Positions 1,942-64,000 of a stretch of DNA of 64,000 nt are shown here, piece by piece. Source of the DNA: Lepidodermella squamata. Its lineage: Eukaryota > Animalia > Gastrotricha. Position 1 is the first letter of the stretch; every line of letters begins with the position of its first letter. Where the stretch lies: contig JBLDXI010000015.1 in NCBI GenBank assembly GCA_047495785.1, positions 2,170,001 to 2,234,000 on the forward strand, given 5' to 3'. A program made the translations under genes and the position numbers. The notes below the pieces were generated by a model that did not search any database, was not told the origin of the DNA, and saw nothing but the letters and a program-made list of their open reading frames with translations.

Positions 1942-2967
1942 ATGAGTAGTAACTTGGCCTGGCCGGATGTTTTGAGTGTTGAAGAGGGCGTCGTCGACAA
2001 AAAACGGCCGCGATTTTTTATGAAACACTCCGACGACAGCGATGACGAATTTGATGCGAGCGCGATAACGAGTAACACGCCACGTGCCAGCATCCACGTG
2101 GCGACACATCGTCATTTCCCCTCAGCGAACAATAACAACAACAGGAACAGCAACGCAGTTGTTTCCTCGACAACGTCAGCTTCCAAGTCTGAGTTGGAGA
2201 TTGTTAGGGCTGAGCTGAAAAAAGCGCAACAGCGACTGGCGGACGAGCGGCGGAAAATCGGCGCTACTGATGCTGCGGTAGCGACGGCGGTGAAGAAGGT
2301 GGCGGCTGTTAAGCAGCAGCTTAACCTCGCCCAGTCTCGTTTTATGCGCGAAAAACGCGACCTCTCTGCGTCGATTACTAATTTGCAGTGCGAGTTGGCT
2401 CGACTGCGCGAGGAAAACTCGCGATTACGCAAAAGCGGCTGCAGCAATAGTAATAATAATAATAATCAAAACAATCAGCAAACGCAAATTACTAAAAGCA
2501 ACAGCGGCGAAATTATCATTGCATCTCTTCTTCGCAATTTACTCACTGAAAAAGCGAAAACTGCTCTGCGGCAAATTGACCCATTGGAAGAAACTGGTGA
2601 AAAGCCGCTTCAAAAACAGCAACCGCCTGTCAAAAATTTGCCTAGCGCTAGTGCCAATTCAATGTTGGTGCAAATTTCGGACATCAAGGCCGAGTTCAAG
2701 GGTGATAATGCGACGAAACAGGCGGCGCAGGAGGCGATTTCAGAGCTGAAAGCTGCCTTTGACGAGTTTGCTCGTGGCGTTGTTTCGCCCGTTGCCACTC
2801 TTGCGGCGTCGTCAAGCCCCGAGGCGCCGTCCTCGTCGAGGACGCCCTCGTTGAAAATGGTGTCGACGTCGCCGGTTTCTTCGCCTACCAACTCACCGCG
2901 TCCTGATTACTCTTCATCTTCTCTTATCGTCATGCCCGGGCCGCCGCCTGGTTTTGAGGATTTCTAA
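1942..2967 (+). CDS. Orphan coiled-coil protein A (341 aa, single exon); N/Q/S-rich, NLS-like KKRPR, C-terminal PPPGF
   Basis: Long ORF with a heptad-like segment (ELEIVRAELKKAQQRLADERR...LQCELARLREENSRLRK) and low-complexity flanks; TATAAAT at 1724-1730. Lacks the full family motif of genes B-F. Confidence 0.7.
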   Translation: MSSNLAWPDVLSVEEGVVDKKRPRFFMKHSDDSDDEFDASAITSNTPRASIHVATHRHFPSANNNNNRNSNAVVSSTTSASKSELEIVRAELKKAQQRLADERRKIGATDAAVATAVKKVAAVKQQLNLAQSRFMREKRDLSASITNLQCELARLREENSRLRKSGCSNSNNNNNQNNQQTQITKSNSGEIIIASLLRNLLTEKAKTALRQIDPLEETGEKPLQKQQPPVKNLPSASANSMLVQISDIKAEFKGDNATKQAAQEAISELKAAFDEFARGVVSPVATLAASSSPEAPSSSRTPSLKMVSTSPVSSPTNSPRPDYSSSSLIVMPGPPPGFEDF

Positions 2968-3165: not shown

Positions 3166-4159
3166 ATGTCTGCGCTTTGGCCTGATTTGGTTAAGCGCTT
3201 GTTGTCGCTTGGTTTAGGCGAAAACTTCATCGCCGCCATCGAAAAGGAGTGCCCGACGCCTGAAGTCATCGCCGCTGTGATAGAATTCGCCGAATCGAAA
3301 CACCAGCCCCGCGAGGCTCGCATGCAGTTCCTGGAGGCGGAAAATCAGCGGTTGCACGACGCTAAATTTCGCCTCGAAATGGCGTTGCGATGCGCGAAAA
3401 AACGCGTCGACCTCGGCGTAGTCGACGAATCCGTCGTTGAAAAAGACAAGAAAATCGCCCAGCTGAGCGCTGAACTCGCCGATTTGAAGCAGAACTCTGC
3501 GTTGATTCAAGAAAAATTGACGCAAGAAAACTCGTTTCTCGCCGAGAGTTTGCAACAAGCTCGAGCTGCCGCGGAAAAATTCGAAGCTCAATACCGCGAG
3601 GCGCTGGATGAAAGCGACAAGGTCCATGAAGAAAATTCGTCTCTCAAAAAGAAACTCAAACAACTGTCTAGTCAAATTGAAGACCTCAAGAAGCCGAGAT
3701 CCTTAGAACAAGAAGTAAGAATTTTTATTAAGGTGGATTTTTTAAAAATTTGTTTTGAATTTTTAGAACGCGACAGCTGCGCGATTTATCGGCCCGAAAA
3801 AGCGAGCGATCGACGCGACTGAAACGGTTGTGAATGTCGTAAATTCGGTGTATCAACAACCCGGTCGACAGCTTCAAATGCCGTCACAATCGATGCCGTC
3901 TTATTCGCTTCAAAATTTCGCAACGCCGCCGACGCCGATTACGCCGGAAAATTTCGGTCAGCCAATGTACCCGCAGCATTATCAACCTCAGCAGCAGCAA
4001 ATGCAGACCGTGTTTCCTGCGCAGCGATCGCCGCCCCAATTTAACCAACCTCAGCAGCAATTATATGCAACACCGCCACAGCAGCAACAGCAGCAGCAAC
4101 AACAACATCGGGCTTATAATAATGGATTAGGTCAATTTCGAAGTGATGCCTATGCGTAG
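3166..4159 (+). CDS. Orphan family gene B (~313 aa): N-terminal motif, coiled coil, Q/P-rich tail; exons 3166-3714, 3767-4159
   Basis: Phase-0 intron 3715-3766 (gtaaga...ttttag) joins ORFs 3160 and 3830 in frame; motif LWPDLVKRLLSLGLGENFIAAIEKECPTPEVIAAVIEFAE. Confidence 0.75.
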
Positions 4160-4845
4160 TCAGCAATTAATTACCTCTTGTTTTTACGATAATTTGCTTA
4201 AGAAAGATAATCTCAACGAAACTCGCGCGATTTTATTGCCGCTTTTTGCTCTTTTCTTGTTTTGATGTCTCGCTCAGACGAAATAAAGAAAAGCTAATAT
4301 ACTGACTGTTGTGATTTTGAAATTTTTCGGTAATTTTTGTCTAGGTGTGGACAGGCGAGGTTGAAATTTGTGATGATTGATGCGGAGAAACCCACCGAAG
4401 AGAAAATTGTCGAAGAAATTGAAACGACTGCTGGTGCTGGTAAGGTTAGGTTCGAAGAACATCTAGTCTTGCTTCTTGAAGCTACGGTCAACTGAAAATA
4501 CCACGGCAATTAGTGGCGAGATAAATCGTGAAAAACCAGGTTCGAATTATTGTTATCAGTTGGTTAACAATTTTGAAAAAACGTTATTTTTGAGTTTTCG
4601 AGTGACATTTTTTGTAATTGTAATTTTAGCCAATTGGGAGTTTCTGGAATATGCTCAGCATTTTTTAGACGGGCAGGAATTATAAATTGAACTGTCTAGC
4701 TTCGTCCGAGCTCCGGATTTTGTAGCTGTTTTGTTCGGGCATGTAAGTATCGCGTTTCAAGGGCAGCGCACCTCCTTACACCTAGCGTCGTTTTCCAAAA
4801 TTTTAATTTCTTGAAAAAATATGTCAATTTTTTTATAATTCCAGG

Positions 4846-5138
4846 TTGGCTCACAAATCGTTGCTTATTAGTTAAGGCTTAATTCTCAGTCTGAGAGCGA
4901 TTTTGCACTCGAAATGCTCGTATGCCTTGGCTGGATTGTGAGCGCAAAAAGCTCATTCAGATCGAACACACGTGTATCTTATCCGGTTTCGGCTGGGTCT
5001 GATGCTGTCAGTATTTGGCCTTATGAATCGCCTCACCGTCGACTTCAGCACCGCTGAGGGGCAAACGCACTATAATTTGCTCACACAAATATCTTCTACG
5101 CCTATCCTTATTGCTTGAGGTAACCATTTGTGAGCCAA
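4846..5138 (+). ncRNA. Candidate structured RNA or fold-back element, unidentified (~290 nt)
   Basis: 21-bp terminal stem with G-U pairs, an internal imperfect hairpin (4890-4961) and a UUCG-capped stem; no convincing ORF and no recognisable family motif. Confidence 0.3.
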
Positions 5139-6385
5139 GCGTTAAGGTTAAGGCTACTGATAGCTTTTGCCAGATTTGAATTCGATTTCATTCGATTTAT
5201 GCTCCCTTTATACTAATTTCGATTTAAAATGATTTTCTGTATTTTACCGGAATGGATCGAATTCACCCGGATTCTGAGCGAGGTGCTTCAATCTCGCCAA
5301 AATCTTTAATTTCACATAACCTTGCTTTTATATGGAATTTCAGGAATATTTTTTTAAATTCGAGAAGCTCGACCATGTCTTTAATCATCAAAACGGTTTA
5401 CAGCTGCTTTGATCGACGGAAAAAATGTCTTGCTTCAGCATTTTAGGTGTTTCACGGATTTTCTGCTATTCTGCAGATTTATTTCTCGAGGTTTTAGCGC
5501 GCGAAATTCATGTGCGTGCGCGCATTTACGCTAAAACTGCGAAATCTCGAGATTGATATCGCGTGACCGTGAGTATTTTTCTCTGGGGCGTGGCGCGACC
5601 GGCCTTCCTTTGACACTAACTAATAGCATAGCTGTGATTACAAAGTCAGCTGTTCGCTTCGCCCCCATCAAATTTTGCGAAGTGATGCGAAGTGATGCCG
5701 TTCAAAATTGTTGAAGTAAAATTGCGCAACGAAAATGGAGGAGGGCATATGAACGAAAATTTACAAAAGAGAAACGAAATACGAGCGAGACGAATTTAGC
5801 GCAACGGCAGAAGAGCAACTCTTGGCGTTTTATACCAAATTGCTGGTTGCTAAATGTGAAAACTTGGCACCAAATGCAATTTTACGCGAAAGTGTCATTT
5901 TTCTAATAATTTTGTCAGCTCGTGGTTACCCTGTGTTCACGAAAGTGATGATAAGGCCAACTTATTTGTTAAAAGTGAAATTACCCAAAAATGTCTCTTT
6001 TTTATAAATAACCCTATAATTTCCACACATTTTGAATGGACACTTTTTGCAATAAATCATTCAAAATTTGATTTGGCTGAAATAATGACCCTATTTTATT
6101 GCCTTTATTTTCTATTAGGTCGAATTCTTCGGTGTGTAATCCGATTAAGTTCCTTGAAACGAGCAAAATGGCTGGTAAAACTTGATTGAGTCTCAATTTC
6201 AGTGAAGTTGAACGGAATGAAAACTTGTTTCTTATCGCTTCGATCCTCTATAGAATTTCATTTTGACCTAGCCGAAAAATATTTCTGCCTCTTCATTATG
6301 AATTTTTTCAACTTTCCATCATTGACTTGTTTGGAGAAAGCTTGTTAGTCGATAGTTGATTTATTGATTTTTCCGCTTATAGGCG

Positions 6386-8868
6386 ATGTTTCGTCCAAGT
6401 TTTTACCCGTTACATCCCGATTATGTTTGTTTTTTAAATCGCCTCGGCGTTGACGATGAGCTAATTAACGCTCTGCAGTATGTACCGCCCAACAGCCCGG
6501 TTCACAACGCAATTGTCAATTCACATGAACGTAGGCTCAAATCCGATTTCAATCAAGCCCATGGCGCCTTTGATAAATTGGAAAAAGCCGAGGAAAAATT
6601 GGAAATGCTTCAATCGTCGCTGGAGAAGTCGATGCTTCGAAGTGAAGAATTATTAAAATCGAAAATGGCCCTGACTTCGAAATGCGAATTTGCGGAGAGA
6701 AAAATTGCCGAGTTGCAAACTTTGCTGGACGAATCGAAAATTCAGGCTGAACTGCTGGCAAAAAGCAATGCCCATCTGCATCTGACAATCGCGACGCTTA
6801 ATTCTGAGAATAGTCACTTGATTTTAAAGCGGCTGGAAAATAGCCGAGACACCGCAACTATGACAGATCAATCGGAGGATGTGACGGCGGCTTTGCGAGT
6901 TCAAGTCAAAGAGTTATCCCAGAAATTTGCGAGCGCCGAATTGGAAACGCTGCGTTGGAAGTCGAAGATCTTGCAAATCAGAGAACAAGAGCAAGTTAAG
7001 GCTGTGCGGCGAGGTTTGATGAAAACGCTCAAGGTCAGATTTTATTAGATTGTCCGAAACTAGAGGTCATAAAAATTACTCTGAAATTTGAAGCTTTTCC
7101 GATTTTATTGATTTTTTCTGCTTGGCAACTATGCCGAACCTCTTTTTCACAAATTTCGCGTGTATTCTTCCTTGAAAAATTGAAGAGTGCGGCTATTCGT
7201 ACATACATATGTACGCCATTTTGGCTATTCGTACATATATATGTACGTCATTTTGGCTATTCGTACATATATATGTACGCGAAAATGGCTATTCGTACAT
7301 ATTTTCAGCTGATTTTTTGCTGATATTCAATTTGATGCTGAATTTTAACGGTAGCTCATAGAAACTTGAGAATTTAGGGGAAGATGTGCCTAATTGTGCA
7401 GAAGTTGTGCCAACAAATTTGACATGCTGGGACCAACCTACCTTTCGGGATGGGCCTAAAACCGATTTATCATTTACCCCTCTAGTTTCCTTAGAGATGT
7501 GCCCACGGAGCTGAAAATTTCAGGGTTCTAAATTCACCCAATTTCCGATGTGTAGTAAAAAATTCAACGCGTTATCTCACAAATTGTACACATGGCATCA
7601 GTTCAATTTATTTCTAAAAATATATGTACGAATAGCCAAAATTGCGTACATATATATGGGTCAATTCAAAAAAAAGTAACACACGAAGTATAGTAAATTT
7701 GCACAATGATGGCTGAATGAAGGGAGTACGAATGAAGAGAATACCGCCCTAATTTTTAGTTAATAGAATGATAGTTTTTATGTCCTGATGTAAATGGCAT
7801 GAAAATCGAGCTAAAAATATCCTGATTCGCATAAAAGTACACCTGATCCCATCCCTGAACGGGACAAAATTACGGTGGAATATCAAGAAAAAATATTATA
7901 AATGCAAAGAAAATCTTTCGGAATATTTCATTTTTTCACTGCTATTTTGATAAAAATAATATTACTTTCCCAGATGAAATGTGTTATTTACGTCTTTGTT
8001 TCCTGCTAGAAACAGCAGACTATATGCTGTGTTGAGCCCTAGCTAACTCAAGCTCGTGATCTATTCCTTTTTTATGAATGCTCCCATCCAATTCTGAGAT
8101 AACGCTGGGTGGGATTTAATTTATTGAGAATAAGTATATGTTTTTAGTTGATTGGACATCACTCTTTGCAGAATATTTTATGGTGGCTTTGTCAAGTGAT
8201 TTTTTTCAGCGGGCGAGCATATAAGATACTGAATCTACAGTATCTTTTCTTATGTTTGAATGGTAAACAGCAGTTCGATTGGCCTGATTTTTCGGCGATA
8301 AAAAAAGCAACTGAAGCAACTGAAGCAAAAAAGCAACTTCGAATTATACAATTCAGGCAGCCACGTACATTTATGTTTGACGAATATTAAGTCGCACCAG
8401 TCGTGCCTTCGCATAAAAGTACTTGCGACCAAATTCGTGGCAAACATACAAGTACTATCCCAAAGGCCGAATAGGGCCTTGACATAAACAAATTCAATCT
8501 GGTAATGAGGCACTGTCGCGCCCACACATAAATATACTAGAATGAATTTGTTTATGTCTTAACCCTATGTACGAATAGCCATTTTCGCGTACATATATAT
8601 GTACGAATAGCCACTCTGAAAATTGAATGACAGGGTTCAGGACTACATTTTCCTTAAATTTAGAGCTGATATCGATTATAGGTATCAGTTTTAAATTTTA
8701 ATGAAATTAATGAAATTTTAAATTATAAAAAAAACTTAATTTTCTCGTTTTCAGGATGGTTGTCATTGCCACAAGAAAACCAGCAAGAAGCGCCGCCATT
8801 GTAAGGGTCAGAAATCGTCGAAAAAAGACAACAATTCGGAGGAATTTGCTATTGTGGTTTCGGACTGA
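6386..8868 (+). CDS. Orphan family gene C (~253 aa): motif, coiled coil, basic tail; exons 6386-7033, 8755-8868
   Basis: Donor aag|gtcaga at 7034 and acceptor tttcag at 8754, phase 0; tail DGCHCHKKTSKKRRHCKGQK...VSD*; motif LHPDYVCFLNRLGVDDELINALQYVPPNSPVHNAIV. Confidence 0.7.
7185..8618. mobile_element. Non-autonomous Mutator/Foldback-like DNA transposon in the intron of gene C
   Basis: Inverted termini built of repeated GGCTATTCGTACATATATATGTACG units; exact 9-bp target-site duplication AAAATTGAA at 7176-7184 and 8619-8627. Confidence 0.8.
7658..8565. mobile_element. Nested non-autonomous DNA element (GGG...CCC termini, 3-bp TSD TAT); superfamily uncertain
   Basis: Splits one subterminal unit of the host element: GCGTACATATATAT|GGGTCAA...TTAACCC|TATGTACGAATAGCC. 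Confidence 0.65.
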
Positions 8869-9293
8869 AATAACGAGTCGAACTTCCCTGAAAATTGGTC
8901 ATTTTTCGTTATCGAATCACAATCCTTAAAACTATTCAGCATATTTTCCACCAAATGCTATGTATCTATATATTTCCACCGTCAAATTTGCAAGCTTTTC
9001 ACGGAAAAATCCTCCTTAATTAATATTATCCTCAATTAAATAATATTACCTATTTTGGCTAGTCGTTTTTCCATTCTGTGTGTATTTCTCAATTTTTGTT
9101 GATTTTTTGTATCGAATAAGTGGTAAAATGTGCGAAGCAAAATATTGAAAGACCGACTATAAGGTCAGGAAAATAAATATAGAATTCGAATGCATTATTC
9201 ATTCATCTATTATTTTGTAGGAATTTATCTGAATTTCTCTTGTTTTTAGATTTATATATATTTTTATTTACCAATTTATTTACCAATTATTTA

Positions 9294-10365
9294 ATGAGTT
9301 ACAAACTACCGGCTGATGTAAAGGCGTATTTCTCGAGAATCGGCTTCGACGACCGAGCAATCGCCGCCTTTGAATCACAAGAGCTTTCGATCGCAGTCAT
9401 CAATTCGATAATTCGATTTGCTCGGAACAAGACACAGGAAATCGACCTGCTTAAAAACAACGAATTATTACCTCGGCCTAAAGACGAGGATTTTTTCGAT
9501 AAATCGCAGGTGAAAAATGACGATGAAGTGAATCGGTTATCGCAAGAATTATCGACGGCGAAACAATTCAACGAAAAATTGAAGGCCGAGCTCGAAAGTG
9601 CTCAAATTCTTATAAAAAACATGAATGCGAATCTGGCGAGGCTGAACGACGAAAGCCACCTGCAAATGTATACCCTCGAAGTGCTTCACAACGAAAACGT
9701 CCAACTCGAGAAGGAAGTTGAAGTGCTGAAAAATGAAAATAAGCTAGCAAAGCAGATCTGCGAGGCTAGAACTGAGGCGGTTGCCGCGAGCCGGGCGGAA
9801 TCTAACAAGCAAGTTGACGCGTTGAAGCGAAAAATCGAGGCGTTGCGCGTGGAAAAACGCGAATTGAAGACTAAACTCAGCGAATTTCAGTCGACTATTG
9901 CCGACATGAAGCGAGTCATTTTCGGCGACACTCGTGAAAAGGTTCGCGTTTTTTTCTTAATTTTAGATGAAGTGTCGGGAATTGGTTGTGGATTGTAAAA
10001 TCAGCGCATCGTTGAATTTCGCGCTTCAAGATGGCAAAAAATCCTCTTTTCTACATTTTTCCAAAAAATTCCGAAATGTTTGAGAAATTGCCTATTTCGG
10101 AGCCGAATTTCATAATTTGGACTTTACAGGTAATTAAGTTGGAATGTAAATGTTCACCTTGATCGATCGCTGAATTTAATTTAAAATTTTTAATTAATTT
10201 TTTTAGTCGAAAACTGGCGGATCGAAAAGGCCCGAAAACGAGACAAAACGGCCGAAAAAGCCGAGAAGATCTGACGATTTGGAGAAGCAAAGTGAAAGTC
10301 GACAGAGCCTGGAAGATGGCGAAATTCGGGACGAACCAGCGCCGCCTCGCAAGAAATCCTATTGA
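9294..10365 (+). CDS. Orphan family gene D (~268 aa): motif, coiled coil, tail with NLS-like clusters and LEDGEI; exons 9294-9941, 10207-10365
   Basis: Phase-0 intron aag|gttcgc...ttttag; exon 2 open to TGA at 10363-10365; motif LPADVKAYFSRIGFDDRAIAAFESQELSIAVINSII. Confidence 0.75.
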
Positions 10366-10529
10366 AAAAATATCCGCAACTTTTTTGCGTCTTTTGTTGT
10401 TGTGTTGTTGTTGCTCACTATTATTTCAATTTAAACTCATTTTAAGCTAGATTTCTTTCAGCATTTGTTTCATGAATTATACAATTTTTAAATGTAACTT
10501 TTCTCGAAATTAGATTTTTGCTGAAAAAA

Positions 10530-12355
10530 ATGGAAAATAATGAATGGGACGAGTTGAAGGCTAACTTGAACCGCTTAGAGTTCAGCGAAGAATTCATCAC
10601 AGTTGTTGAAAATGACCGCCCTTCCTATGCCGTGTTGAATGCGCTAATTTCCGATGCGGAAAAGCGGCTTGAGGAGCAGCGTGAACTGCGGCGGGTTAAT
10701 GAGCAGTTGACCGCCGAACTTGCGTCTGTAGGCTCGAGTTTGAAGCACAGTGAACAGTGCATTCTCGACGCTGATCGGTTGATTGCTGAACTGAAGGATC
10801 GGAACGACAAATTGCGGCTGGAAATTGAAGAAAGCAATCCTAATAATCATGAACCTTCGCTAGAAAGAGGTAAAAACAATTTCCTTCAGGAAAAATTAGG
10901 TCTCATCAGCTTTCGGTTGATATTGAAATCAACGTTAATTTGAGCAAAAAATCGATTTTCGGAAAAATCAAAATTTGTGTGACTTGATGTCCCTAATATC
11001 TTGGCTCCTAATGTCATTTTTCTCACATTTACAAGATACTCTCTGTTGTTTTTTATTCAAATTTCAAAAGCGTTCAAATGATCCAATAATTGTCCAAGTT
11101 TAGGCCCTGATGTTTTAACTTTCCGAAAAACCATCTAAAACGACGACCAGAAATTCTCAAAATTTGCAGCGGAATCGGGAATTATCTCTGGTTTAAATTT
11201 GGGTCCAAATATTCGCACTACTAAAAATGAGGTTCCAGCCGTAAATTTGAGCGTCGTGGCGCTACATTTTTCAGATTATTTGCGAATTCGGCGTTTTCGT
11301 TTTTTGATCGATACTGATGCCCTCCCAGAACCTAGGATTTTTTGTTTCAGCTACCTGGCGCCCTAGCTAAGTAAAAAAATTATCGATGTTGGGTTCCACG
11401 ACGGCTGATATCGGAAAAATCACTGATTTGTAAAATCGATACTTGGAATCGATATTGCCTCTGTAGGCTGAAGTATGACTCTCATAGTGCAAAAGACGCG
11501 CAATAGGAAGACCTTTTTATGTTAGGCATGATACCAACAAATTTAGATTCTCGTGAAGACATGAAACTGGGAAATCTAGTGTTGGTGTCTCAAATTTAGT
11601 GCTGGAACCCTAAATTTGGGGTGCGCACTTGGTACACCCTTTAAATTTTAGAATTTTCTTTTAGCAAATACTGATTATTTTAAACTTCGTAAATCATGGA
11701 TATTCCCGCCTCTTCTCCTCCTTATGATGATGTAGTGGTTTCATTTTCTGTTCATTTTATATCTCAATTTATTTTAGAGTTGAGTGTCGAGTCCGGCATT
11801 AAGGAGGATTCCTTCGATCATGAAGAAGTTGAATCCGGCGAGGCGAGCAATGACGGTGAAATTAAGGAGGAATGTGACGCGAATAAGCGCTCTCATCGGC
11901 GCCATCGCAGTCACAGCCGGCATCGCAGCAAACACCGGAAATCAAGGCGCCGCCATCGATCACCGCGGGAAAATCTCGACGAAATTCAACCAGTCGATAA
12001 ACAGGCGAAAAATCAGCAGCAGAAAATTGACGAAATGCCTATGTTGCCGCCTGTCCCGCCACCGACATTTTTCTCACCGGCCTACGGGCAAATAATGTCT
12101 TCTCAGGTGCAAAATCAGCTTCCAGCTGTTCCGCCGCCGATTTTTACGCCGCAAAATAATTTTCAACCGAATATTAATTTCGCAAATTCGGCGCCTTTAC
12201 CGCCGTTGGAATTGATTAAAATGCTGCAAAATCAACGGAATAATGCGATTTTTCGAGCTATGCCACCCAACTTCAACGTCCCGCCGCCGCCACCGCCGAT
12301 TTCTCTGCCCGGTTACGGCGGGTTCAACTTGAACAATTTACCTCATCGATTTTAG
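10530..12355 (+). CDS. Orphan family gene E (~305 aa): motif, short coiled coil, RS/RH-rich and Pro-rich tail; exons 10530-10869, 11778-12355
   Basis: Phase-1 donor gag|gtaaaa matches the phase-1 acceptor ttttag at 11777; motif EWDELKANLNRLEFSEEFITVVENDRPSYAVLNALI. Alternative: ORF 11696-12355 is a separate gene. Confidence 0.6.
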
Positions 12356-13300
12356 ATGAATAAAGCGACTTGGATTGTGCCACATTTTAATGGAAGAATA
12401 AATTGCATTTTATTTTATCGATTGACTTTTTCGTTCATTTGAGTAGTTGTTTATTATTTAGCGTTCTGTCGATTTTTATCGAAGCTCACCTGAAATGTGG
12501 CGAGCAGTCGCTGTAGTTCGAATGATAATGAACGGAAAATAATAAAAGATTCATCGTCATTGCGCATGTGGTGGTGGTGGTGGTGTGTTCTCGAATTAAT
12601 AATTGATAACACGTAGGCATTGACAAAGTTGGGCTGGGCTGGGTGGTCTCGCGATAAAGCCACAGTCGTAGTTCTTTCGCAGAAACGCGCCCAGCAGCGG
12701 TTTTCGTGCTTTGACAACACTAATAGTTATAATATTAATAGAAAACGCGACGGAAAAACATCCAGCCAGCGTGCACTGTGCGGACTCATTTTTCAGTTCA
12801 TATCATCTGCGGCTGTTGGTAAAAAGCAACAGCGGCCGTGGCGATGAATAGCCGTTGTTTGGCATCAAAGCTAAAATATTTCAAACCATCGTCTTTTTTA
12901 AGCTGGATTTTTTATTTTCCGATTTTCGTCAATTCAAACCTCGTTGGCTTGCTTTATTTTTCGTTCTTATCGTTTTCCTCGAGTCCTCGGTCGTTGACCT
13001 ACTTTGAAGACAGTGCAAACTGGACTTCGGACCTCGTGGGCGCCACGTGTTTTTGCAAGTCGCGTGGCCTAATTACGCAACACCGCCACGCCTCTCAAAT
13101 AAAACAGCACACACGCGAAACGTGGCCTGCTGTTTGCTGGTCGACGACGCAGTCATTCTTGTTTTATTGCGAACGAACGTCGTCATAATTTTCAATTGCG
13201 TTTTCTGTTTTTATTATAATAGGTCTGCTTGCAGCGGAATGATTACTACCACTACAATTATTGCTGTGTAATTTCTTGGATTTTCTTGCTTTAATACGAA

Positions 13301-15350
13301 ATGACGGATTTACCTCATCGCAACTTGCTGGCTTCATTGCCTAATGCTTCGGTGCCGTCGTCGCAGGAGCGCGACGAGTCGGAGTGGCAGGAGTTGAAAG
13401 GACATTTTAAAAGGCTAGGCTTCGCCGAGGACGTGCTTCAGGCCATGGAGGCCGACTGCCCGTCGTTCGAAGTTCTTCAATCTTTCATCACGTGGTTCGA
13501 CGCGCAAAAACGCGCCGAGCTCAATTTGTCGTCCGCCCTCGCCGACACGAAGAAACAGCTCGACAATGTGCGGCACGATCTCAAGGAGGGTCAGACGTTG
13601 CGAAACGTCGAGTTCGACGTCGCCCAAAAGCGCCTGAAAGCCGCGCAGGCCGAGGCGGATTCGAACAGGACTCGGGCGGATAAGCTTGAAGCTGCGTTGA
13701 AACACGAACGCGAAGACCGGCAACGCGTCACCGCCGAGCTGATGAACCGCGATCTTGAAGTCATGGAGCTGAAAAATCGTTTACAACAAGCCGAGTCCGG
13801 CGACGTTCAAGCTCTTACGGCTATCAATTCGAACCTAGCCGCTGGTCATTCGCAATTGAAAACGGAATTAACGGCTCGTGATCGACAAATTTCAGCGTTA
13901 AATCAAGAGTTGGATCAGTTAAAGGCTACTCGTGATAAATTGTTATCTGATGTTAAAATGGCTCAGGATCAATCGGCGCAGTGGAAGGCGAACTGCGACG
14001 AGTTGAGACTGTCGTTTCGCATTCAAATGGATTCGTTGCGACGTGAGCACGAAAAGTCGGCGACTTCTTCAGAAAACTCGGACTCGTCTTGGGCGGAGAA
14101 ATTGCGCCGAACTGAGGAGATTTTGAGGTTGCAAACGCAAGTTTCCGCTAAATTTCAGGCTCAAAACGAGGCGTTGCATGAGGAGTTGAACGTGAAGAAG
14201 GCGGAATTAACGGCGCTGGGTGAAGAAAAAGCGAAACTGCAACGCCAGCTGGAAGAAGCTCTGTCTCTAGCAATGGCTAGTCGGAAACTATCGGCCTCTT
14301 CGTCGCCTCCGCTGGCGTTGTTGAAAGCCGAGGCCGTTGAAACTTGTTGTAGCCATTCAGAAACGCCGCTTCCTCCGCCTGCAGAAAACGTGCGAAATTC
14401 ACCGTTTCAGTTATCTAAAATTCAACCGCCGTCTTCGCTTTACCAAACTTATCAACCAGCGCTGTCGGCTGATTCGAAGGAAACCGGCGCCTGCTCGACA
14501 ATTTCGCCGTCAGAATCAGGTGAGGGGAACAAAAAGAGCGATTTTAAGGAGGATTTTTTTGAAAAACTCGAATTTTTTCTCACACTGACAGGCCCTGGAG
14601 ATGACAGTTTTAGCATGATGACTAGTGAGGAGATATCGATGATGGACGATATCAATGATTTGCCATTGTTGAAGTCGATCAACGCTCAGTTGTGTAGGAA
14701 AGTCTCGGAGCGTACTGCTAAATATTTCGAAATGCGAAAGGAACTTCAGGAATGCCAGGCGTGCTATACCTCGATTTGCAAACAGCTTCAGGTAAATTTC
14801 ACGCCGGATGCTTGCCTTATAGTAATATTGTCTGAAATGAGGTCATTTCATTTTTGGCCTACTTTGAGGTTAAATTTTGGACAACCGTTGCAGCAACTGG
14901 GAATTTTAATTCCGATATCATGATTTTCAGGAGGCGAAAAAGGAGTCTGATGACAAGCAGGAGTACATAATCAAGTTGCGCCGGCGTCTACGCCATTTGG
15001 GCCAGGATTTGGAGGAATTTGCGGCGCACGAAGCCCGGAACCAGGCGGCGCGCTCAAGCTGTGACTCTACCGGCTTCAATTGCCCGTCTCCGATTGCGGC
15101 CTCGGATTCTGAGCCGCCGGCTAAAATGTTCCGCCGGAGTGGTAGCATCGCTCACAACGCGAACCATAGCCCGTCGCCTAACTACAACAACGGCCCTAAT
15201 AACTATCAATATCGGCCTAACCGGGGCAATAATAATAATGGCGTCAACAATAACAACATGTTCGTTCCTGGTCGACGGCGGCAGCAGTTTAATAACAACA
15301 ATAATAATTACAATGAGGGCGCGATGAGAAGCTTCACGCCACGCCACTGA
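13301..15350 (+). CDS. Orphan family gene F (~612 aa): motif, long coiled coil, Asn-rich prion-like tail; exons 13301-14519, 14592-14791, 14931-15350
   Basis: Two GT-AG introns preserve frame; motif EWQELKGHFKRLGFAEDVLQAMEADCPSFEVLQSFI; tail NYNNGPNNYQYRPNRGNNNN. Confidence 0.78.
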
Positions 15351-17172: not shown

Positions 17173-18605
17173 ATTTTTTTATCAAAAAAATCCACCCTAA
17201 AATTAGAAAATTCAAGCTTGATAGAAAATTGTTATTAATCGGAATTTACGATAATATTTCCGTATTAAAAGTGTTTTTCAACCGTAAATTATTGATTGAA
17301 CGTGGGTTTGAAAATAGGGCAATTTTTCAATGGGATACTTCGTTAAATTTATAAATAAATACAGCGAAATTGGAAGCCCTATAAAAACACAAGAATTTGC
17401 ACCTCTGCGTAACGGAAGCGCAAAGTCAAGAGCTCATCAGATTGAAACTATTTTTTTATATAGAGACCGGAAGCCCTCGAATATAAAGCGAGACGAAAAA
17501 CGCGACGACAAAAAAACGGCGATGCGAGGTCAGGATAAAAAAGGATTTAACTTTGGAAATGAATTCAAAGTCCATAATATAGATTTTAGTGTAGGGAAAA
17601 CTATGGAAAACAGAAAATTATGGATTACAAAAATCATCATCGAGGGTCGCAGACAGAAGAAGCTGACGTAAAACTTGAACTATGAAATTTTAATAAAAAT
17701 GTAGAAATTAATTTTTCTGCGTAATAATAAAAATGTCAGATCTGCTGCAAGCTGTTGAGGAAATTTGAGATGTTTTCTATAGCTGCCAGTCGGTTAGTCA
17801 TTTATTCTGCGTAATATAAACTGCGTGTCTGAGAGCCGCCTGTTTTTTTCTCATTTTCACCTCGCCTCTGCCAACGCGTGTTCGCCGCGCAGCTAATCGG
17901 CGCTAATTAGAGCCAATATCCGATAATGACGCCGACGATGCTATGCTATCGAACGGCGCACATTTTTTTGTCACCTTCACGCGCACTCACGCAAAAAACA
18001 CGCGCGCAAAAAACGTTCGCGTCTTCATTAAAAATATCTCTTAAAAAACAGTAATTTTCGATGATGAAATGAGTGATAAGCTTTCTGCGTGTTTTTTATA
18101 TTTCGTATCTTTCTTCTAATGCGAATGACTGGACATTTCCGGTCCTCGTATGGACATCATGATCGCGGTCATTTTATTGGTGCACGATCCCGTATGATTT
18201 ATATTGTCATAAATTGGTTTTATAACGGTCATATTTTCGATGCGATAGATGCGATGATTTCAGCATACAAATCGTTATTATACGCGCAAACAAATGCCTA
18301 CCGGTGCGAGCGTGCGTTTTTCGTTGTCATGAGGTCAACGCAGCCGCGTACTATTTAAACAATTTAAATTGGTTCCTTGGGCATGGTTGCAAAGGAAAAC
18401 ACCCTGAAACCAAGCACGTGATTGTTCTAATACCAAAAACCAAGGGCCTTTTCTCCATCTTAATGTGAATTGTAATCTCCCGTTTATTCGTATATTCACT
18501 GCGCAATTGAGATGGTGAAAAATGAGATGCATATTTTTTAGTGCCGTAAAATGAAAGGAGGTGGGTGCAAGCAATTAGTAACAATTTGCAACGATCAAAA
18601 GCGTT

Positions 18606-18679
18606 AGGTTCCGGCGGGGTTCGAACCCGCGACCTTCTGCGTGTAAAGCAGACGTGATGAACCACTACACAACGGAACC
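18606..18679 (-). tRNA. tRNA-Val(TAC)
   Basis: Cloverleaf GGTTCCG...CGGAACC; anticodon arm TCTGC-TTTACAC-GCAGA; GTTCGAA T-loop; downstream TTTT. Confidence 0.95.
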
Positions 18680-18757
18680 TGTTGATAATAAAGATGGAAT
18701 AATATAATTAAAGCCCGAAAATTCGCTAAGTCTGAAATTTTTAAAATTTAAAAACAT

Positions 18758-18829
18758 TGGAGATGCCGGGGTTTGAACCCGGGACATCTTACATGCAAAG
18801 CAAGCGCTCTACCACTGAGCTACATCCCC
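18758..18829 (-). tRNA. tRNA-Ala(TGC)
   Basis: GGGGATG...CATCTCC-A with G3:U70; anticodon loop TTTGCAT; oligo-T terminator. Confidence 0.95.
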
Positions 18830-18903
18830 AGATGATCTCAAGGAATTTTATCCTCTTTTAATCGCAATGGGACCTTATTGAAGTTGGAAAAAAGTGTTGG
18901 ACG

Positions 18904-18976
18904 AGGTTCCGGCGGGGTTCGAACCCGCGACCTTCTCCGTGTGAAGGAGACGTGATAACCACTACACTACGGAACC
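18904..18976 (-). tRNA. tRNA-Val(CAC)
   Basis: GGTTCCG...CGGAACC; anticodon arm TCTCC-TTCACAC-GGAGA. Confidence 0.95.
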
Positions 18977-19045
18977 TGAGTCATTACATTGGTACCTGTT
19001 TAGGCCATTATATCCGAAGCCACATTGATTATGGGAGAAAAATAG

Positions 19046-19117
19046 TTCCCTGACCGGGAATCGAACCCGGGCCGCCGCGGTGAAAGCGCGGAATCCTAAC
19101 CACTAGACCATCAGGGA
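19046..19117 (-). tRNA. tRNA-Glu(TTC)
   Basis: TCCCTGA...TCAGGGA-A; anticodon arm CCGCG-CTTTCAC-CGCGG. Confidence 0.95.
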
Positions 19118-19189
19118 GGATGAAACTTGATCCTAATTGGGATGTGACCTTCGTTAGGAATTAGGATCCTATTGCCATAAAATTGAAGC

Positions 19190-19263
19190 TGCCCCCTGTG
19201 AGGATCGAACTCACGACCTCCAGATTATGAGACTGGCGCTCTAGCCAACTGAGCCAAGGAGGC
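19190..19263 (-). tRNA. tRNA-Met(CAT), elongator
   Basis: GCCTCCT...AGGGGGC-A; loop CTCATAA; TTCG T-loop and G1-C72, so elongator rather than initiator. Confidence 0.95.
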
Positions 19264-19342
19264 GCTTGTGGTCACTCTAGGTCAAATTCTCATTTCCTAA
19301 TTGAACGCCGATTGATTGATGCTAGGCGAAAAAGAGAAGCCG

Positions 19343-19414
19343 AGGCCCAGACGGGGATCGAACCCGTGACCTTCTGTTTACAAGACAGATGCTCTACCAC
19401 TAAGCTACTGAGCC
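19343..19414 (-). tRNA. tRNA-Thr(TGT)
   Basis: GGCTCAG...CTGGGCC-T; anticodon arm TCTGT-CTTGTAA-ACAGA. Confidence 0.95.
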
Positions 19415-19500
19415 GGCTCATTGATGGATGTCTGATTATCTGTCCATTTTTGTTCCTCAATCGAGCTTCTTTGACTGAAGATTCGTGGGCAAAAAATAAT

Positions 19501-19572
19501 CGACCCAGATGGGACTCGAACCCACAATCTCCGGCTCCGGAGGCCGACGCCTTACCATTAGGCCACTAGGCC
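19501..19572 (-). tRNA. tRNA-Arg(CCG)
   Basis: GGCCTAG...CTGGGTC-G; anticodon arm TCGGC-CTCCGGA-GCCGG. Confidence 0.93.
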
Positions 19573-19885
19573 GAGTTAATATTCGTAGCAATCTGAAATT
19601 TAACTCAGACATCATTAAATTCTTTGAATAATCAGCATGCAATACTCTGCTGTAGCCGCTATTGAGAATCATTCGTTTGAGTCTAAATATTCCAGCAACC
19701 TCCGCTAGTCATTGTTGCCATCTAATGCATAAAAACTATTGCGCCTCTTGGACCTTTCAAAGAATTTCGGGTTTCACTTTATTTCTATTTGAAAAGATGC
19801 GTGCGCATTTGAAAAGATCAGCACATTTGTCCCATGAATAGTGATTGGAGGTAAAAAAAATAAATAAAAAAACAAAAAAGAACTC

Positions 19886-19958
19886 CGCCGAGACCCGGGA
19901 TCGAACCAGGGACCTTTAGATCTTCAGTCTAACGCTCTCCCAACTGAGCTATCTCGGC
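19886..19958 (-). tRNA. tRNA-Phe(GAA)
   Basis: GCCGAGATAGCTCAGTTGGGAGAGCGTTAGACTGAAGATCTAAAGG...; long oligo-T terminator. Confidence 0.96.
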
Positions 19959-20783
19959 TGTGACAGTGGCGAGTTGATAAAAATAATCAAGTAACAGCCA
20001 CACACACGTATCAAATTTCTTATCTTACTGACTGTGGGTGCCGCTTCCCTTCAAAAAAAATGCATAGCAGTCATCTACATGGCTCTTTTATTTATGAGAA
20101 CAGCTTCGTTAATCTCGGCGGCTATTGATTGCAATTCGATATTTCCATTGAGTTTTTTTTTCAAAAAATCAACCCGTTTTTGCGCTATATTACCTGAGAC
20201 AAGATAGTATATGTGTGTTATCCGGGTCGTATCGTAAAATTTTCAGGGTTACTAGTATTGTATGGTACACTCTCGCTGAATTTCTATTGATTTGATTTGA
20301 AATTAAAAGATCCAACTTAAAAAATCACGAAATTTGTTTCTTGCTCATTTTTTTCTCGCATTCTTCATTTTGCGAGTTTTTGGTTCGTTTTTCACATAGA
20401 ATTTCCCGCATTTCTGGCACGCCAAACAAATTGCTGGTGCTGAATCTTGTAATTGGGCTCTCGCACCAAGGTGGTTCTGCTCGATTGGCTTCGGATGGCT
20501 ATCAATACGACTGTCAATGCGACAATGCGGTTTGCAGAGCTGCTGCTAAATCGACGAAGAACACGATCGACGAAATCTTGAACGAATAGCCGCAATGTGT
20601 CAGGGTTTCAGCAAACGCCCAACAAGACCTGCTCGAATTTGTCTACTTCGCTCGATTCGCTGTATCTTCTAGCTTTCGCTGTCACAAGCGATGCCGTGCT
20701 GCGATTTCTGGAATCCAATGCTGCCCGAGCTCTCTCTGATCTCACGGAAAGCTGGCCGATTGTTTCTTGATTTCCGCGACATG

Positions 20784-20870
20784 CTGGACGAATTCTGCCC
20801 ACATTTCGCCAATTTCTGGACGAATTCTGCCCAAATTTCGCCAATTTCTGGACGAGTTCTGCCCGATTTT
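20784..20870. repeat. 32-bp tandem repeat, ~2.7 copies
   Basis: Unit CTGGACGAATTCTGCCCA(C/A)ATTTCGCCAATTT. Confidence 0.85.
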
Positions 20871-21033
20871 CCCGAGCTCTTGGCTAAGTGCTGTTCGATT
20901 GGGGTGAATGCTGCCCGATTCGATACCTGGCGTGTGCAATTTCTTCCAAAATTATGCCAAATTTCTCGTGATTCTTAATAAAATCGTTTTCGAGTGTTGC
21001 TTAAACTTTTTTGGGTTTCTCTTGTGTGTTTGA

Positions 21034-21139
21034 CAAGTGGGGTTTTTTGTGATATTTTCTGGACAAGCGGGCATTTTTTGATATAAAAAATATCAAAAAA
21101 TCCCTGCCTGTTTAGAAAATATCAAAAAATCCCTGCTTG
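21034..21139. repeat. Imperfect ~50-bp-arm inverted repeat made of ~30-bp subunits
   Basis: CAAG...TTTTTTGATA twice, mirrored by TATCAAAAAATCCCTGC twice. Confidence 0.75.
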
Positions 21140-21291
21140 GAAGAAGGTTTTATGAGTTTATAATTCGGCCATTAAGAAGGCATATTTTACGATACGATCC
21201 GGATAACAAGAAAAAAAACACATCTTGGCCTTTAAATGAGATATTAATTAAGAAAAAAATGGGAAGAATTACTTATAGTCAAAACAGAAGC

Positions 21292-21365
21292 TGCCCCCTG
21301 TGAGGATCGAACTCACGACCTCCAGATTATGAGACTGGCGCTCTAGCCAACTGAGCCAAGGAGGC
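21292..21365 (-). tRNA. tRNA-Met(CAT), elongator, second copy
   Basis: Identical to 19190-19263, including a few flanking bases. Confidence 0.95.
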
Positions 21366-21667
21366 GCTTGTGAAAATTTCAACCAGGCTATCGGGGATCA
21401 TTCTTTGCGTTGAATATATCAGCATATCAGAAATGAGTGGATAGTGATTAAATAAATGACATCACGTCAATCGATATCAGCCATCCATGCCCACTCAACC
21501 TATGAAGCCGATTTCGCTTAAAAAAAGCGAATCATTTACAATTTATATTATTATGTATTATTATGTATAGATAGAACCGTCGAAAAGTCTCTTGACATGA
21601 AACGATTTTATTATACAACCTTAGCCTCTCGGCTCAGAACATTTATCAAAAGATTCAGCAATCAGCC

Positions 21668-21739
21668 GGCTCAGTAGCTTAGTGGTAGAGCATCTGTCTT
21701 GTAAACAGAAGGTCGCGGGTTCGATCCCCGTCTGGGCCT
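21668..21739 (+). tRNA. tRNA-Thr(TGT), second copy
   Basis: One substitution versus 19343-19414 (T-stem A-U to G-U); TTTTT terminator follows. Confidence 0.95.
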
Positions 21740-22239
21740 CGGCTCCTCTTTTTCGAACCTGGGAATTCCTGGCGATTCCAAGATATCAAAGTTGAGATGA
21801 TTTGTCATGCCTGGCTCGTATTTTGATTTGAAGGTATAGAATCTGCAAGATATAGACGTCAATTTTAGCATTTGCAATTTATTTTGCTCTCAGTTGAAAC
21901 ATTTTAAGTCCATCGTTTGACAAACTTGATTTGTGAAGGCTACGAAATCTGAGCGTTTTATCATTTGATGCTTTTAAAATTCCCTTATCTATTTCTATAG
22001 GTATACCACGCTCATGTCAAGAAAACAGATACATCGGTAAAGCAAATAACATTTTCAGCATCGATCTTTTGTACAAATATCGAGCTTGATAAATTATTTA
22101 CAGGCGTTTTTCATTCATCAGAATACCCAGCATTTCAATCAATTATTACGCACTAGGACTTGGCTACCACTTTTTAATATAAAAACTTCAGTTTTTTCCT
22201 TTTTCATTGACACGTTGATTCGTCGCCTCCTTGAATTTT

Positions 22240-62800: not shown

Positions 62801-64000
62801 TTTGATTCAAGAAGGCTGTAGTTTGAGGCACTGGTGTCAAATAAATTGGGTCGCAAGTCGGGCATTGATACGCCACAAATGTGAACTTTTTCAGAACCAA
62901 GTCTTCTTGATCGCTGAAACCACTGCACCTGATATCAAAATTAGTTGTCAGGGCATAACCTTCTTTTGGAGAAACGCGACAAGATGCCGCAGTAGCATTC
63001 GGTGGACTGTCGATATACATCACTGCCATCGATCGACCAACCCTAGTGCCGCCAGACATTTTGGCCTCTGATACAACGACAAATGCCCGCCGATATTGCT
63101 TCGGCCCGAAGGCGTTAGGGTCGAAGGTTATGTCCGGCCCCGATTTTCCGGTCGATGTCAAAAGGGTCCAATTTGCCAATGTTTCAAGCGAAGCTGCGTC
63201 TCTATCTTCGTCGTAGAAAGATGAAGCAATGAACTCCAAATAGAAGACCTCGGGCGCACCATCAGGGATAGGAATAAACAACCAATTATAGCGGTATATT
63301 CTACCAATAATTTTGTTGTCTATGGTTCGCCGAAATGCCATCCTAGCCGCCGGATTCATCAAACAGCCAACGCGATAATTTGTCCCGCAATTCGCGAGAG
63401 GAATTACACCACCAGAAGGCGGTTCTCCTTTCTCAAGTCGAACGCTTTGAACAGCATAGCTCATTCTTTTCGTTAATCGATCGAAAACAATTGCGAGCAT
63501 GTTGAAGGTTTCGTTTTCAAACATATATGACGTAGTTAAAGCAACAGTTCCATCTGCCTTTGTGTAGTAAGCAGTTATGTTGTAGGTCTTCGGCTTGCCG
63601 TCTTCATCCTTGAATGTCAACGAACGAATAAAACGCGGCAGGTTTATTGATGGGGCCAGTTCTTTCACAGGATACGGGAAACTCGGATCGTCCTTCGAAT
63701 GCCAGCCCTGATAAAAACAACCGGGTAAGTTCTTTCCCATTTTCTCCTCTTCGGCATCCTTTGCGGGACATGCAGTTGGCTTCCATTGTTGAGGATTATT
63801 GACAAAGCTGTCCGCCTGAGCATAAGTCTGAAATTGCGGCCAATTGCCTTCACAGGACCTCTTGCAGTAGAGATGAACCTCGAGCGGTGTGCTCAGTTCG
63901 TCAGGATCATAACTGTTCTTGCGAGCATTTACCAAATGAATTTGACCGGACCCGAAAATTCCATCAACATATGGCGGCATAGGGTTGAACTTTGCCACCA
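56867..64000 (-). CDS. Tandem paralogue of the PKD1-like gene (REJ to C-terminus; 5' part lies beyond the window)
   Basis: Near-identical protein and the same intron positions as 30867-38020; frames intact; introns diverged. Confidence 0.9.

What the first reader, a model, noticed from the sequence alone, without database searches (positions are those of the whole stretch)
3166..15350. Tandem orphan gene family defined by an ungapped ~42-aa N-terminal motif, coiled coil and variable disordered tail
Seen: genes B-F align without gaps at their N-termini. B LWPDLVKRLLSLGLGENFIAAIEKECPTPEVIAAVIEFAE; C LHPDYVCFLNRLGVDDELINALQYVPPNSPVHNAIVNSHE; D LPADVKAYFSRIGFDDRAIAAFESQELSIAVINSIIRFAR; E EWDELKANLNRLEFSEEFITVVENDRPSYAVLNALISDAE; F EWQELKGHFKRLGFAEDVLQAMEADCPSFEVLQSFITWFD. 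Each continues into a coiled coil and an intron, and then a tail with a basic NLS-like cluster (PKKRA, KKTSKKRR, KRPKKPRR, KRSHRR, PAKMFRR). The tails differ completely in chemistry (Q/P, K/H/C, acidic-basic, RS plus Pro, poly-N). Known: the helix-LGF-helix pattern recalls UBA domains, and copy D also resembles the first helices of SAM domains, but I cannot assign either. Inference: an old, fast-evolving family of nuclear oligomerising adaptors with a shared docking head and swappable tails, such as condensate, chromosome-axis or RNA-surveillance scaffolds.
Basis: partly seen in the sequence, partly recalled or inferred. Interest (0 to 1): 0.85.

Follow-up and report, generated by a model that had tools for sequence, protein, structure and literature searches.

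The report
Orphan capped coiled-coil gene subfamily
Five neighbouring genes of a tiny freshwater animal (probably the gastrotrich Lepidodermella squamata) are a real, diverged branch of a 25-plus-member gene family with no recognisable relatives elsewhere; three of the five are shown to be expressed, each is predicted to make a two-stranded rod with a small three-helix cap and a different floppy tail, and their job is still unknown.

Summary
The five quoted 40-aa motifs sit exactly where stated. Their ungapped alignment is far above shuffles (pairwise z 4.7-8.6). Each gene is the first non-training hit of a profile built from the other four (E 1e-10 to 0.015).

B-F are not a family on their own. 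Profile-profile comparison (HHalign 94%, score 34.7 against at most 13.9 in 100 shuffles) joins their head to that of 20 more co-oriented genes just upstream and downstream. This scan has already reported those arrays on adjacent DNA (s1-398039, s1-421515). All 25 detectable heads of the 121-Mb genome lie within 165 kb of one contig.

- **Structure:** the head folds as a three-helix cap (pLDDT 87-90). B's first exon is predicted as a parallel, in-register dimer (score 0.49, best control 0.01).
- **Expression and constraint:** cDNA contigs show D, E and F transcribed and F spliced. A second strain differs by 20 synonymous and 9 non-synonymous changes, and its exon indels are in frame.
- **Known families:** nothing matches in Pfam, PDB or 1.84 billion proteins. 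A UBA-like signal is weak (HHalign about 50%, helix 1 and loop only) and has no structural support.

The nuclear and condensate roles are untested.

The parts
3166..4159 (+). Gene B, 313 aa. Exon 1 is 3166-3714 (head 3175-3294, then rod). The intron is 3715-3766 (52 nt, GTAAGA..TTTTTAG, phase 0). Exon 2 is 3767-4159 and encodes a Gln/Pro-rich tail.
   Evidence: The rod is predicted as a parallel in-register homodimer with contacts at residues 49-175. Expression was not tested.
6386..7033 (+). Gene C, exon 1: head 6410-6529 (the most diverged of the five), then rod. The exon end at the 7034 donor is inferred.
   Evidence: C is the first non-training hit of the profile of the other four, but only at E 0.015.
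8755..8868 (+). Putative last exon of gene C: a 37-aa Lys/His/Cys-rich tail containing KKRR. It would be reached through an inferred 1721-nt intron (7034-8754) that holds a 32-nt tandem repeat.
   Evidence: The exon is in frame with a TTTTCAG acceptor, but there is no read evidence.
9291..10365 (+). Gene D, 269 aa. Exon 1 is 9291-9941 (head 9306-9425, then rod). The intron is 9942-10206. Exon 2 is 10207-10365 and encodes an acidic-basic tail with KRPK and KKPR.
   Evidence: cDNA contigs cover both exons, and their depth arithmetic fits nothing between 9942 and 10204. A 5-nt deletion in the second strain at 10121 lies inside this intron. A SMART cDNA oligo follows 10469.
10530..12355 (+). Gene E, 305 aa. 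Exon 1 is 10530-10869 (head 10542-10661, short rod). The intron is 10870-11777 and carries a high-copy repeat. Exon 2 is 11778-12355: acidic, then an Arg/His/Ser run, then Pro-rich.
   Evidence: cDNA depth is 17-51 on exon 1, 0 at 10900-11099 and 29-36 on exon 2.
13301..15350 (+). Gene F, 612 aa. Exon 1 is 13301-14519 (head 13382-13501, long rod). Intron 14520-14591. Exon 2 is 14592-14791 and contains a CxxC. Intron 14792-14930. Exon 3 is 14931-15350, with an Asn-rich tail.
   Evidence: One 973-nt cDNA contig skips both GT..AG introns. The joined frame is open.

Best explanation
B-F are five intact paralogues that form one diverged branch of a lineage-restricted, tandemly arrayed family. Transcription is shown for D, E and F. 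The family has at least 25 heads, all within 165 kb of one contig of a genome that is probably the gastrotrich Lepidodermella squamata.

Each protein has three parts. First comes an N-terminal cap of about 45 aa made of three helices. The third helix runs straight into a parallel, in-register two-stranded coiled coil of 60 to more than 330 residues. A short intron follows, then a low-complexity tail that differs in every copy.

Only the hydrophobic core and loop positions of the cap are conserved across the family.

Most likely mechanism (inferred, not shown): the proteins are intracellular homodimeric scaffolds. The conserved cap either docks one shared partner or nucleates and caps the rod. 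The rod sets spacing and valency. The divergent tails (Gln/Pro-rich, Lys/His/Cys-rich, acidic-basic, Arg/His/Ser plus Pro-rich, and Asn-rich) recruit different clients. For C, D and E, tail chemistry makes the nucleus or RNA-protein bodies the most plausible site.
For: - **Motif is real and in register:**
- **Same head as the flanking arrays:** HHalign probability 94.2%, P 1.1e-7, score 34.7 over 40 columns. One hundred column shuffles gave mean 8.4 and maximum 13.9; the reversed alignment gave 10.8. There are reciprocal weak HMM hits in register. MAFFT aligns all 25 heads in one register.
- **Genome-wide count:** 25 matches, all at C15:2118162-2281196.
- **B-F are a sub-branch:** they form one side of a branch with support 93/86.
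- **Cap fold:** three helices at pLDDT 87.4 and 90.5.
- **Dimer:** score 0.49 (runs 0.49, 0.47, 0.50) against a best control of 0.01. The runs agree in at least 54% of contacts and partner pLDDT is at least 69. Same-residue contacts run from 49 to 175. The mark was reached by 21 of 30 solved homodimers and 0 of 23 solved single chains.
- **Transcription and splicing:** a spliced contig in F, a SMART oligo, and exon-shaped coverage of D, E and F.
- **Constraint:** 20 synonymous against 9 non-synonymous differences from a second strain, pN/pS about 0.13. Indels are +9 and -3 in exons, and -1, +1, -7 and -5 in introns.
- **Open frames:** all five gene models are open.
Against: - No experiment or homologue gives a function.
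- Nuclear targeting rests on short basic clusters, which are weak in B and F.
- The dimer prediction was made without an alignment. Coiled coils are easily laid side by side by such models, and the head made no confident contact.
- Expression of B and C, and the C gene model, are untested.
- The selection estimate uses only the 40 of 116 differences that the tool listed.
- The species name rests on matching assembly statistics only.
Confidence: 0.55

Rival explanations
1. The cap is a very diverged UBA-clan domain. The family would then be a lineage-specific expansion of dimeric ubiquitin- or UBL-binding adaptors, with an N-terminal UBA followed by a coiled coil, as in UBXN1/SAKS1 without its UBX domain.
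For: HHalign of the heads against nine bona fide UBA domains of the same genome gives probability 48-52% and score 20-21. One hundred shuffles gave means of 6.6-8.5 and maxima of 12.4-14.8.

That score is close to the true remote pair UBA against CUE (62.8%, score 22.5). It is also specific: CUE, SAM, homeodomain and LisH all give under 4%.

The layout is the same: helix, hydrophobic-Gly/Asp/Asn-aromatic(-Pro) loop, helix, helix, with nearly equal lengths.
Against: - The confident alignment covers only helix 1 and the loop, 19-25 columns.
- The Pfam UBA model hits none of the 25 heads, even at E 1.
- No UBA or CUE chain is among the top 50 of 48,161 PDB representatives for either model.
- The same L..L..LGF word also pulled out bacterial peptidoglycan-binding repeats by chance.
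Confidence: 0.2
2. The proteins are structural rods of a gastrotrich-specific cell structure, such as ciliary rootlets, the adhesive or cuticular apparatus, or a filament system. The cap would be an end-to-end assembly module and the tails gel-forming low-complexity regions.
For: - The rods are long, parallel and dimeric.
- The array is large and lineage-specific, with members of many lengths.
- Feature-space neighbours are generic coiled-coil structural proteins, at score 0.93 or below.
- There is no signal peptide and no enzyme domain.
Against: - Rod sequences and lengths are not conserved between paralogues, running from 63 to more than 330 residues. That is unusual for co-assembling filaments.
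- Arg/His/Ser, Gln/Pro and acidic-basic tails are more typical of nuclear or RNA-protein-body proteins.
- There are no localisation data either way.
Confidence: 0.2
3. The shared motif is a chance resemblance of amphipathic helices, or the genes are decaying, untranscribed copies.
For: C is recovered only at E 0.015, and rods and tails share nothing.
Against: - The statistics argue against chance.
- There is a spliced cDNA.
- Differences from the second strain are mostly synonymous, and exon indels are in frame.
- All five gene models have open frames.
Confidence: 0.03

Closest known systems
The 'orphan head-plus-coiled-coil' arrays already reported by this scan on flanking DNA (s1-398039 upstream, s1-421515 downstream)
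   Same: The strand and contig are the same. The head has the same three-helix layout and aligns in one register. The head sits at the N-terminus and is followed directly by a coiled coil. Neither group has outside relatives.
   Different: B-F form their own branch (support 93/86). They have Gly-Phe without the Pro of the upstream 'L-D-L-P' type, and they lack the upstream type's conserved R-N-x-Y-E motif after helix 3. Single-profile HMM searches do not cross between the groups, apart from B at E 0.006.
UBA domain (Pfam PF00627, UBA clan), and N-terminal-UBA-plus-coiled-coil adaptors such as UBXN1/SAKS1 (architecture recalled from general knowledge)
   Same: Both are three-helix modules of about 40 aa with a hydrophobic-Gly-Phe loop after helix 1. 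The profile-profile score is comparable to that of UBA against CUE.
   Different: The heads fall below every Pfam threshold. Helices 2 and 3 do not align with confidence. No structural match to a solved UBA was found. Ubiquitin binding is untested.
Helices alpha3-alpha5 of MerR-family regulators (for example PDB 3qao)
   Same: This is the best structural match. Two short helices pack on the start of a long dimerising helix: Z 7.1 and 6.8, rmsd 1.7-1.8 A over 49 and 44 residues, and Atlas TM 0.86.
   Different: It is a geometric analogy only. The Z scores are within the range the tool calls common for helical models. Sequence identity is 16-18%. The MerR winged helix-turn-helix is absent. The MerR coiled coil is antiparallel (from general knowledge), whereas this one is predicted to be parallel.
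Pinin-like and other coiled-coil proteins with Arg/Ser or Gln/Pro-rich tails of nuclear speckles (recalled from general knowledge, not tested)
   Same: The overall plan is shared: a small N-terminal domain, a coiled coil, and a low-complexity Arg/Ser-like or Gln/Pro-rich tail (E and B).
   Different: No sequence similarity was detected in Pfam. The resemblance is compositional only.

Membership tests
Orphan capped coiled-coil family of this genome (scan notes s1-398039 and s1-421515) | The N-terminal head aligns to the family head profile. | tested here: met
   HHalign of B-F against 20 neighbouring heads gave probability 94.2% and score 34.7, with a shuffle maximum of 13.9. In the 25-head profile search, B-F score E 5e-12 to 3e-8, though they are part of that profile.
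Orphan capped coiled-coil family of this genome (scan notes s1-398039 and s1-421515) | The head is followed directly by a dimeric coiled-coil rod. | tested here: met
   A parallel dimer is predicted for B from residue 49. Heptad-periodic segments are present in all five genes by a crude measure.
Orphan capped coiled-coil family of this genome (scan notes s1-398039 and s1-421515) | The gene is a co-oriented member of the tandem cluster on contig C15. | tested here: met
   All 25 heads are on the + strand between C15:2118162 and C15:2281196, and B-F lie in the middle.
UBA (PF00627) | The sequence scores above the Pfam gathering threshold. | tested here: not met
   There is no UBA hit at E up to 1 for the five first-exon ORFs or for the 25 heads. 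The genome-wide PF00627 search finds nine UBA domains, none of them in this cluster.
UBA (PF00627) | Profile-profile homology extends over all three helices. | tested here: inconclusive
   Probability is 48-52% and score 20-21, with confidence only over helix 1 and the loop. The signal is specific relative to CUE, SAM, homeodomain and LisH, and is similar in size to UBA against CUE.
UBA (PF00627) | The fold superposes on solved UBA domains. | tested here: not met
   No UBA or CUE entry is in the top 50 of two searches over 48,161 chains, or in Foldseek. The tool warns that a missing match is not proof that the folds differ.
UBA (PF00627) | The domain binds ubiquitin through the Met/Leu-Gly-Phe loop and helix 3. 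| not testable with these tools
   This needs a binding assay.
SAM (PF00536) | Sequence or profile similarity to SAM domains. | tested here: not met
   There is no Pfam hit. HHalign against 12 SAM domains of the same genome gives probability 0.9-3.8%. The head has three helices, not five.
LisH (PF08513) | Sequence or profile similarity, and a head-to-head dimer. | tested here: not met
   HHalign probability is 0.2-0.3%, though the control set had only two LisH sequences. No confident head-to-head contacts appear in the predicted dimer.
MerR-family regulators | An N-terminal winged helix-turn-helix precedes the dimerisation helix. | tested here: not met
   The head begins at protein residues 4-27, so there is no room for such a domain. 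There is no MerR Pfam hit. Only helices alpha3-alpha5 superpose.

The most novel reading that the evidence does not exclude
The cap is an extremely diverged UBA-clan module. The cluster of 25 or more genes would then be a lineage-specific, combinatorial set of dimeric ubiquitin- or UBL-reading scaffolds whose interchangeable low-complexity tails route marked proteins to different nuclear or cytoplasmic bodies. I know of no such expansion in any animal.
Probability: 0.12. Interest if true: 0.65.

Novelty: new variant of a known kind. Interest (0 to 1): 0.4.

Why it matters
Gastrotrichs are almost unstudied at the molecular level. One 165-kb locus holding 25 or more constrained genes (transcription shown here for D, E and F) with no relatives in 1.84 billion proteins is a clear case of lineage-specific invention by tandem duplication.

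Only a 45-residue cap has been held constant, while the rods and tails have diverged beyond recognition. That makes the family a natural experiment on what a coiled-coil scaffold needs to keep.

This report adds two things to the earlier notes. First, the five genes in this window bridge the two arrays already reported, which makes them one family. Second, the cap carries a weak but family-specific UBA-like signal, which turns 'function unknown' into a cheap bench test of ubiquitin or UBL binding.

Without a function, the interest stays moderate.

Tried and rejected
**Sequence searches that found nothing**
- Pfam on the first-exon ORFs, the tails and all 25 heads gave only sub-threshold coiled-coil noise.
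- A PDB sequence-profile search gave nothing below E 0.04.
- Exhaustive HMMER of the B-F head profile against 1.84 billion proteins gave nine hits. The four I inspected were repeat proteins (short tandem repeats, ARM-like repeats, peptidoglycan-binding repeats). All nine match only part of the profile, most in several stretches, so I count them as false.
- A word-indexed search with F exon 1 found nothing.
- The metagenome scan failed with the alignment, which had no conserved stretch, and found no relative with F exon 1.

**Fold and feature searches**
- Foldseek against PDB found nothing for either head model.
- ESM Atlas feature searches gave generic coiled-coil neighbours for F (0.93) and noise for the B head (0.77).
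- The MerR match is rejected as homology. It is an analogy in geometry only.

**Ideas rejected**
- SAM and LisH.
- Gene A (1942-2967) is not a member. It has no head and no similarity to any paralogue.
- A putative middle exon of D (10031-10129): it has no cDNA coverage, and the second strain carries a 5-nt deletion there.

**Limits of what was run**
- The B-F profile alone did not find the neighbouring heads, even with filters off. Only the profile-profile comparison did.
- Joined (spliced) full-length proteins were never sent to a search or fold tool. All searches were made exon by exon, by reference.
Full report
**Setting.** The window is G000:C15:2170001-2234000 of a 121.2-Mb, 151-contig eukaryotic assembly. 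Introns are short, GT..AG, with T-rich CAG or TAG acceptors, and GC is about 44%. Earlier notes of this scan name the gastrotrich Lepidodermella squamata. The published assembly of that species has 122 Mbp, 157 contigs and 43% GC (PMC11660948), which fits. I could not test the name in any other way.

**The observation.**
- The five quoted 40-aa strings occur verbatim at B 3175-3294, C 6410-6529, D 9306-9425, E 10542-10661 and F 13382-13501, all on the + strand.
- Ungapped BLOSUM62 scores are 16 to 82, against shuffled means near -40 (z 4.7-8.6). No shuffle in 5000 reaches any pair. The sum-of-pairs z is 19.9.
- With default HMMER filters, a leave-one-out profile recovers B, D, E and F (E 4.5e-7 to 4.4e-9) but not C.
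- With filters off and 55-aa heads, every gene is the first non-training hit among 2790 pieces, in register. C comes in only at E 0.015.
- So the motif is real, and C is the outlier.

**Gene models.**
- B: 3166-3714 and 3767-4159, 313 aa, with a 52-nt intron.
- D: 9291-9941 and 10207-10365, 269 aa.
- E: 10530-10869 and 11778-12355, 305 aa.
- F: 13301-14519, 14592-14791 and 14931-15350, 612 aa.
- C: 6386-7033 and 8755-8868, 253 aa. This model is inferred only.
- All five joined frames are open.

**Transcription.**
- One public run (X1) holds a 973-nt contig that skips exactly the two GT..AG introns of F.
- X1 also carries a SMART cDNA oligo after 10469, so it is cDNA.
- Its coverage follows the D, E and F exons and falls to 0 at 10900-11099 and 12500-12699.
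- Depth arithmetic for 9900-10299 fits a contig that joins 9941 to 10207. That supports the D intron and rules out a middle exon I had considered.

**Constraint.**
- A second run (X2, DNA) differs by about 1-2% in its long pieces.
- Of the 40 differences listed, out of 116 in total, 29 fall in D, E or F exons: 20 synonymous and 9 non-synonymous.
- With 3.5 non-synonymous sites per synonymous site, that gives pN/pS of about 0.13.
- X2 indels are +9 and -3 in the F tail, but -1, +1, -7 and -5 inside introns.
- The genes are therefore under purifying selection now, although the paralogues are very old.

**A larger family.**
- A look-up of earlier notes pointed to two arrays reported next to this window. 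I fetched 60 kb on each side.
- Twenty more co-oriented genes start with a head of the same layout.
- A profile of those 20 finds B at E 0.006, in register. The B-F profile finds one downstream gene at E 0.044.
- HHalign of the two alignments gives probability 94.2%, P 1.1e-7 and score 34.7 over 40 columns. One hundred column shuffles give mean 8.4 and maximum 13.9, and the reversed alignment gives 10.8.
- MAFFT aligns all 25 heads in one register.
- A genome-wide search with that profile returns 25 matches, all at C15:2118162-2281196. A further partial copy lies just before the window.
- In a tree of the heads, B-F form one side of a branch (93/86), with long terminal branches.
- Outside the head, no paralogue finds another by phmmer, in either rod or tail.

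**Structure.**
- AlphaFold2 gives three helices for the head, at pLDDT 87.4 with 5 sequences and 90.5 with 25 sequences.
- Two copies of B exon 1 are predicted to pair in parallel and in register from residue 49 to 175, with heptad-spaced contacts.
- The score is 0.49 (runs 0.49, 0.47, 0.50), and the best of three controls is 0.01.
- The runs agree in at least 54% of contacts, and partner pLDDT is at least 69.
- The mark was reached by 21 of 30 solved homodimers and 0 of 23 solved single chains. The tool cautions that the counts are microbial and that a pass may come from memory.
- The head made no confident contact across the dimer.
- A crude heptad measure finds periodic, Pro/Gly-poor segments after each head.

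**Comparison with known families.**
- Pfam, PDB sequences and 1.84 billion cluster representatives give nothing real.
- By shape, the best match is helices alpha3-alpha5 of MerR regulators (Z 7.1 and 6.8, Atlas TM 0.86). These Z values are in the range the tool calls common for helical models, and the MerR DNA-binding part is absent. I treat it as an analogy: two short helices folded back on the start of a dimerising helix.
I collected bona fide domains from the same genome and ran HHalign:

| Comparison | HHalign probability | Score |
|---|---|---|
| Heads vs UBA | 48-52% | 20-21 |
| UBA vs CUE (a true remote pair, as calibrator) | 62.8% | 22.5 |
| Heads vs CUE, SAM, homeodomain or LisH | under 4% | 7-15 |

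- For heads against UBA, the shuffles reached at most 12.4-14.8, and only helix 1 and the Gly-Phe loop align with confidence.
- The UBA likeness is therefore real as a pattern and family-specific, but it is partial and lacks structural support. I put descent from UBA at about one in five.

**Mechanism.**
- Shown or predicted: the genes are intact and constrained, D-F are transcribed, the head is a three-helix cap and the rod a parallel dimer. The tails are unrelated to one another and low in complexity.
- Inferred: these are intracellular dimeric scaffolds with a common cap and client-specific tails.
- The basic clusters are convincing for C and D. E has an Arg/His/Ser run. B and F are weak.
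- Nuclear or RNA-protein-body roles are plausible but untested.

**Verdict.** The family is new at the sequence level but of a familiar general kind, and this scan had already found it on adjacent DNA. This report adds two points: B-F are a bridging third branch of that family, and the cap gives a testable UBA-like lead.

Noticed in passing
window 18605-21740: An array of ten tRNA genes (Val-TAC, Ala-TGC, Val-CAC, Glu-TTC, Met, Thr-TGT, Arg-CCG, Phe-GAA, Met, Thr-TGT). Nine are on the - strand, spaced about 150 nt apart, and the array sits just after the gene cluster.
   Followed up: partly
window about 11300-11600 (inside the intron of gene E): A very high-copy repeat. Summed contig depth in the DNA run reaches about 63,000, against about 120 around it, with many rearranged joints. 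It is probably a transposable element or satellite fragment.
   Followed up: no
window 1942-2967 (+): Gene A is a 341-aa ORF with poly-Asn runs and weak coiled-coil hits, lying between the upstream array and B. It has no head and no detectable similarity to any family member.
   Followed up: partly
G000:C15:2168867-2169238 (372-1133 nt before the window start): An open frame carrying only helix 3 of a family head plus a rod (neighbour profile E 0.0036). It may be a further family member whose first helices lie in another exon or have been lost.
   Followed up: no
window 14592-14791 (F exon 2): A CxxC (Cys-Gln-Ala-Cys) with a third Cys five residues further on, inside a stretch I read as helical (not predicted). 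Metal-bridged, Rad50-hook-like pairing is a thought only.
   Followed up: no
window 31032-38595 and 57015-63998 (- strand): Two nearly identical copies of a block of long polycystin/REJ-like membrane-protein ORFs. This looks like a recent segmental duplication, and further lectin-like ORFs lie beyond the window end.
   Followed up: no
window 7191-7302: A 32-nt tandem repeat of 3.5 copies, inside the inferred long intron of gene C.
   Followed up: no
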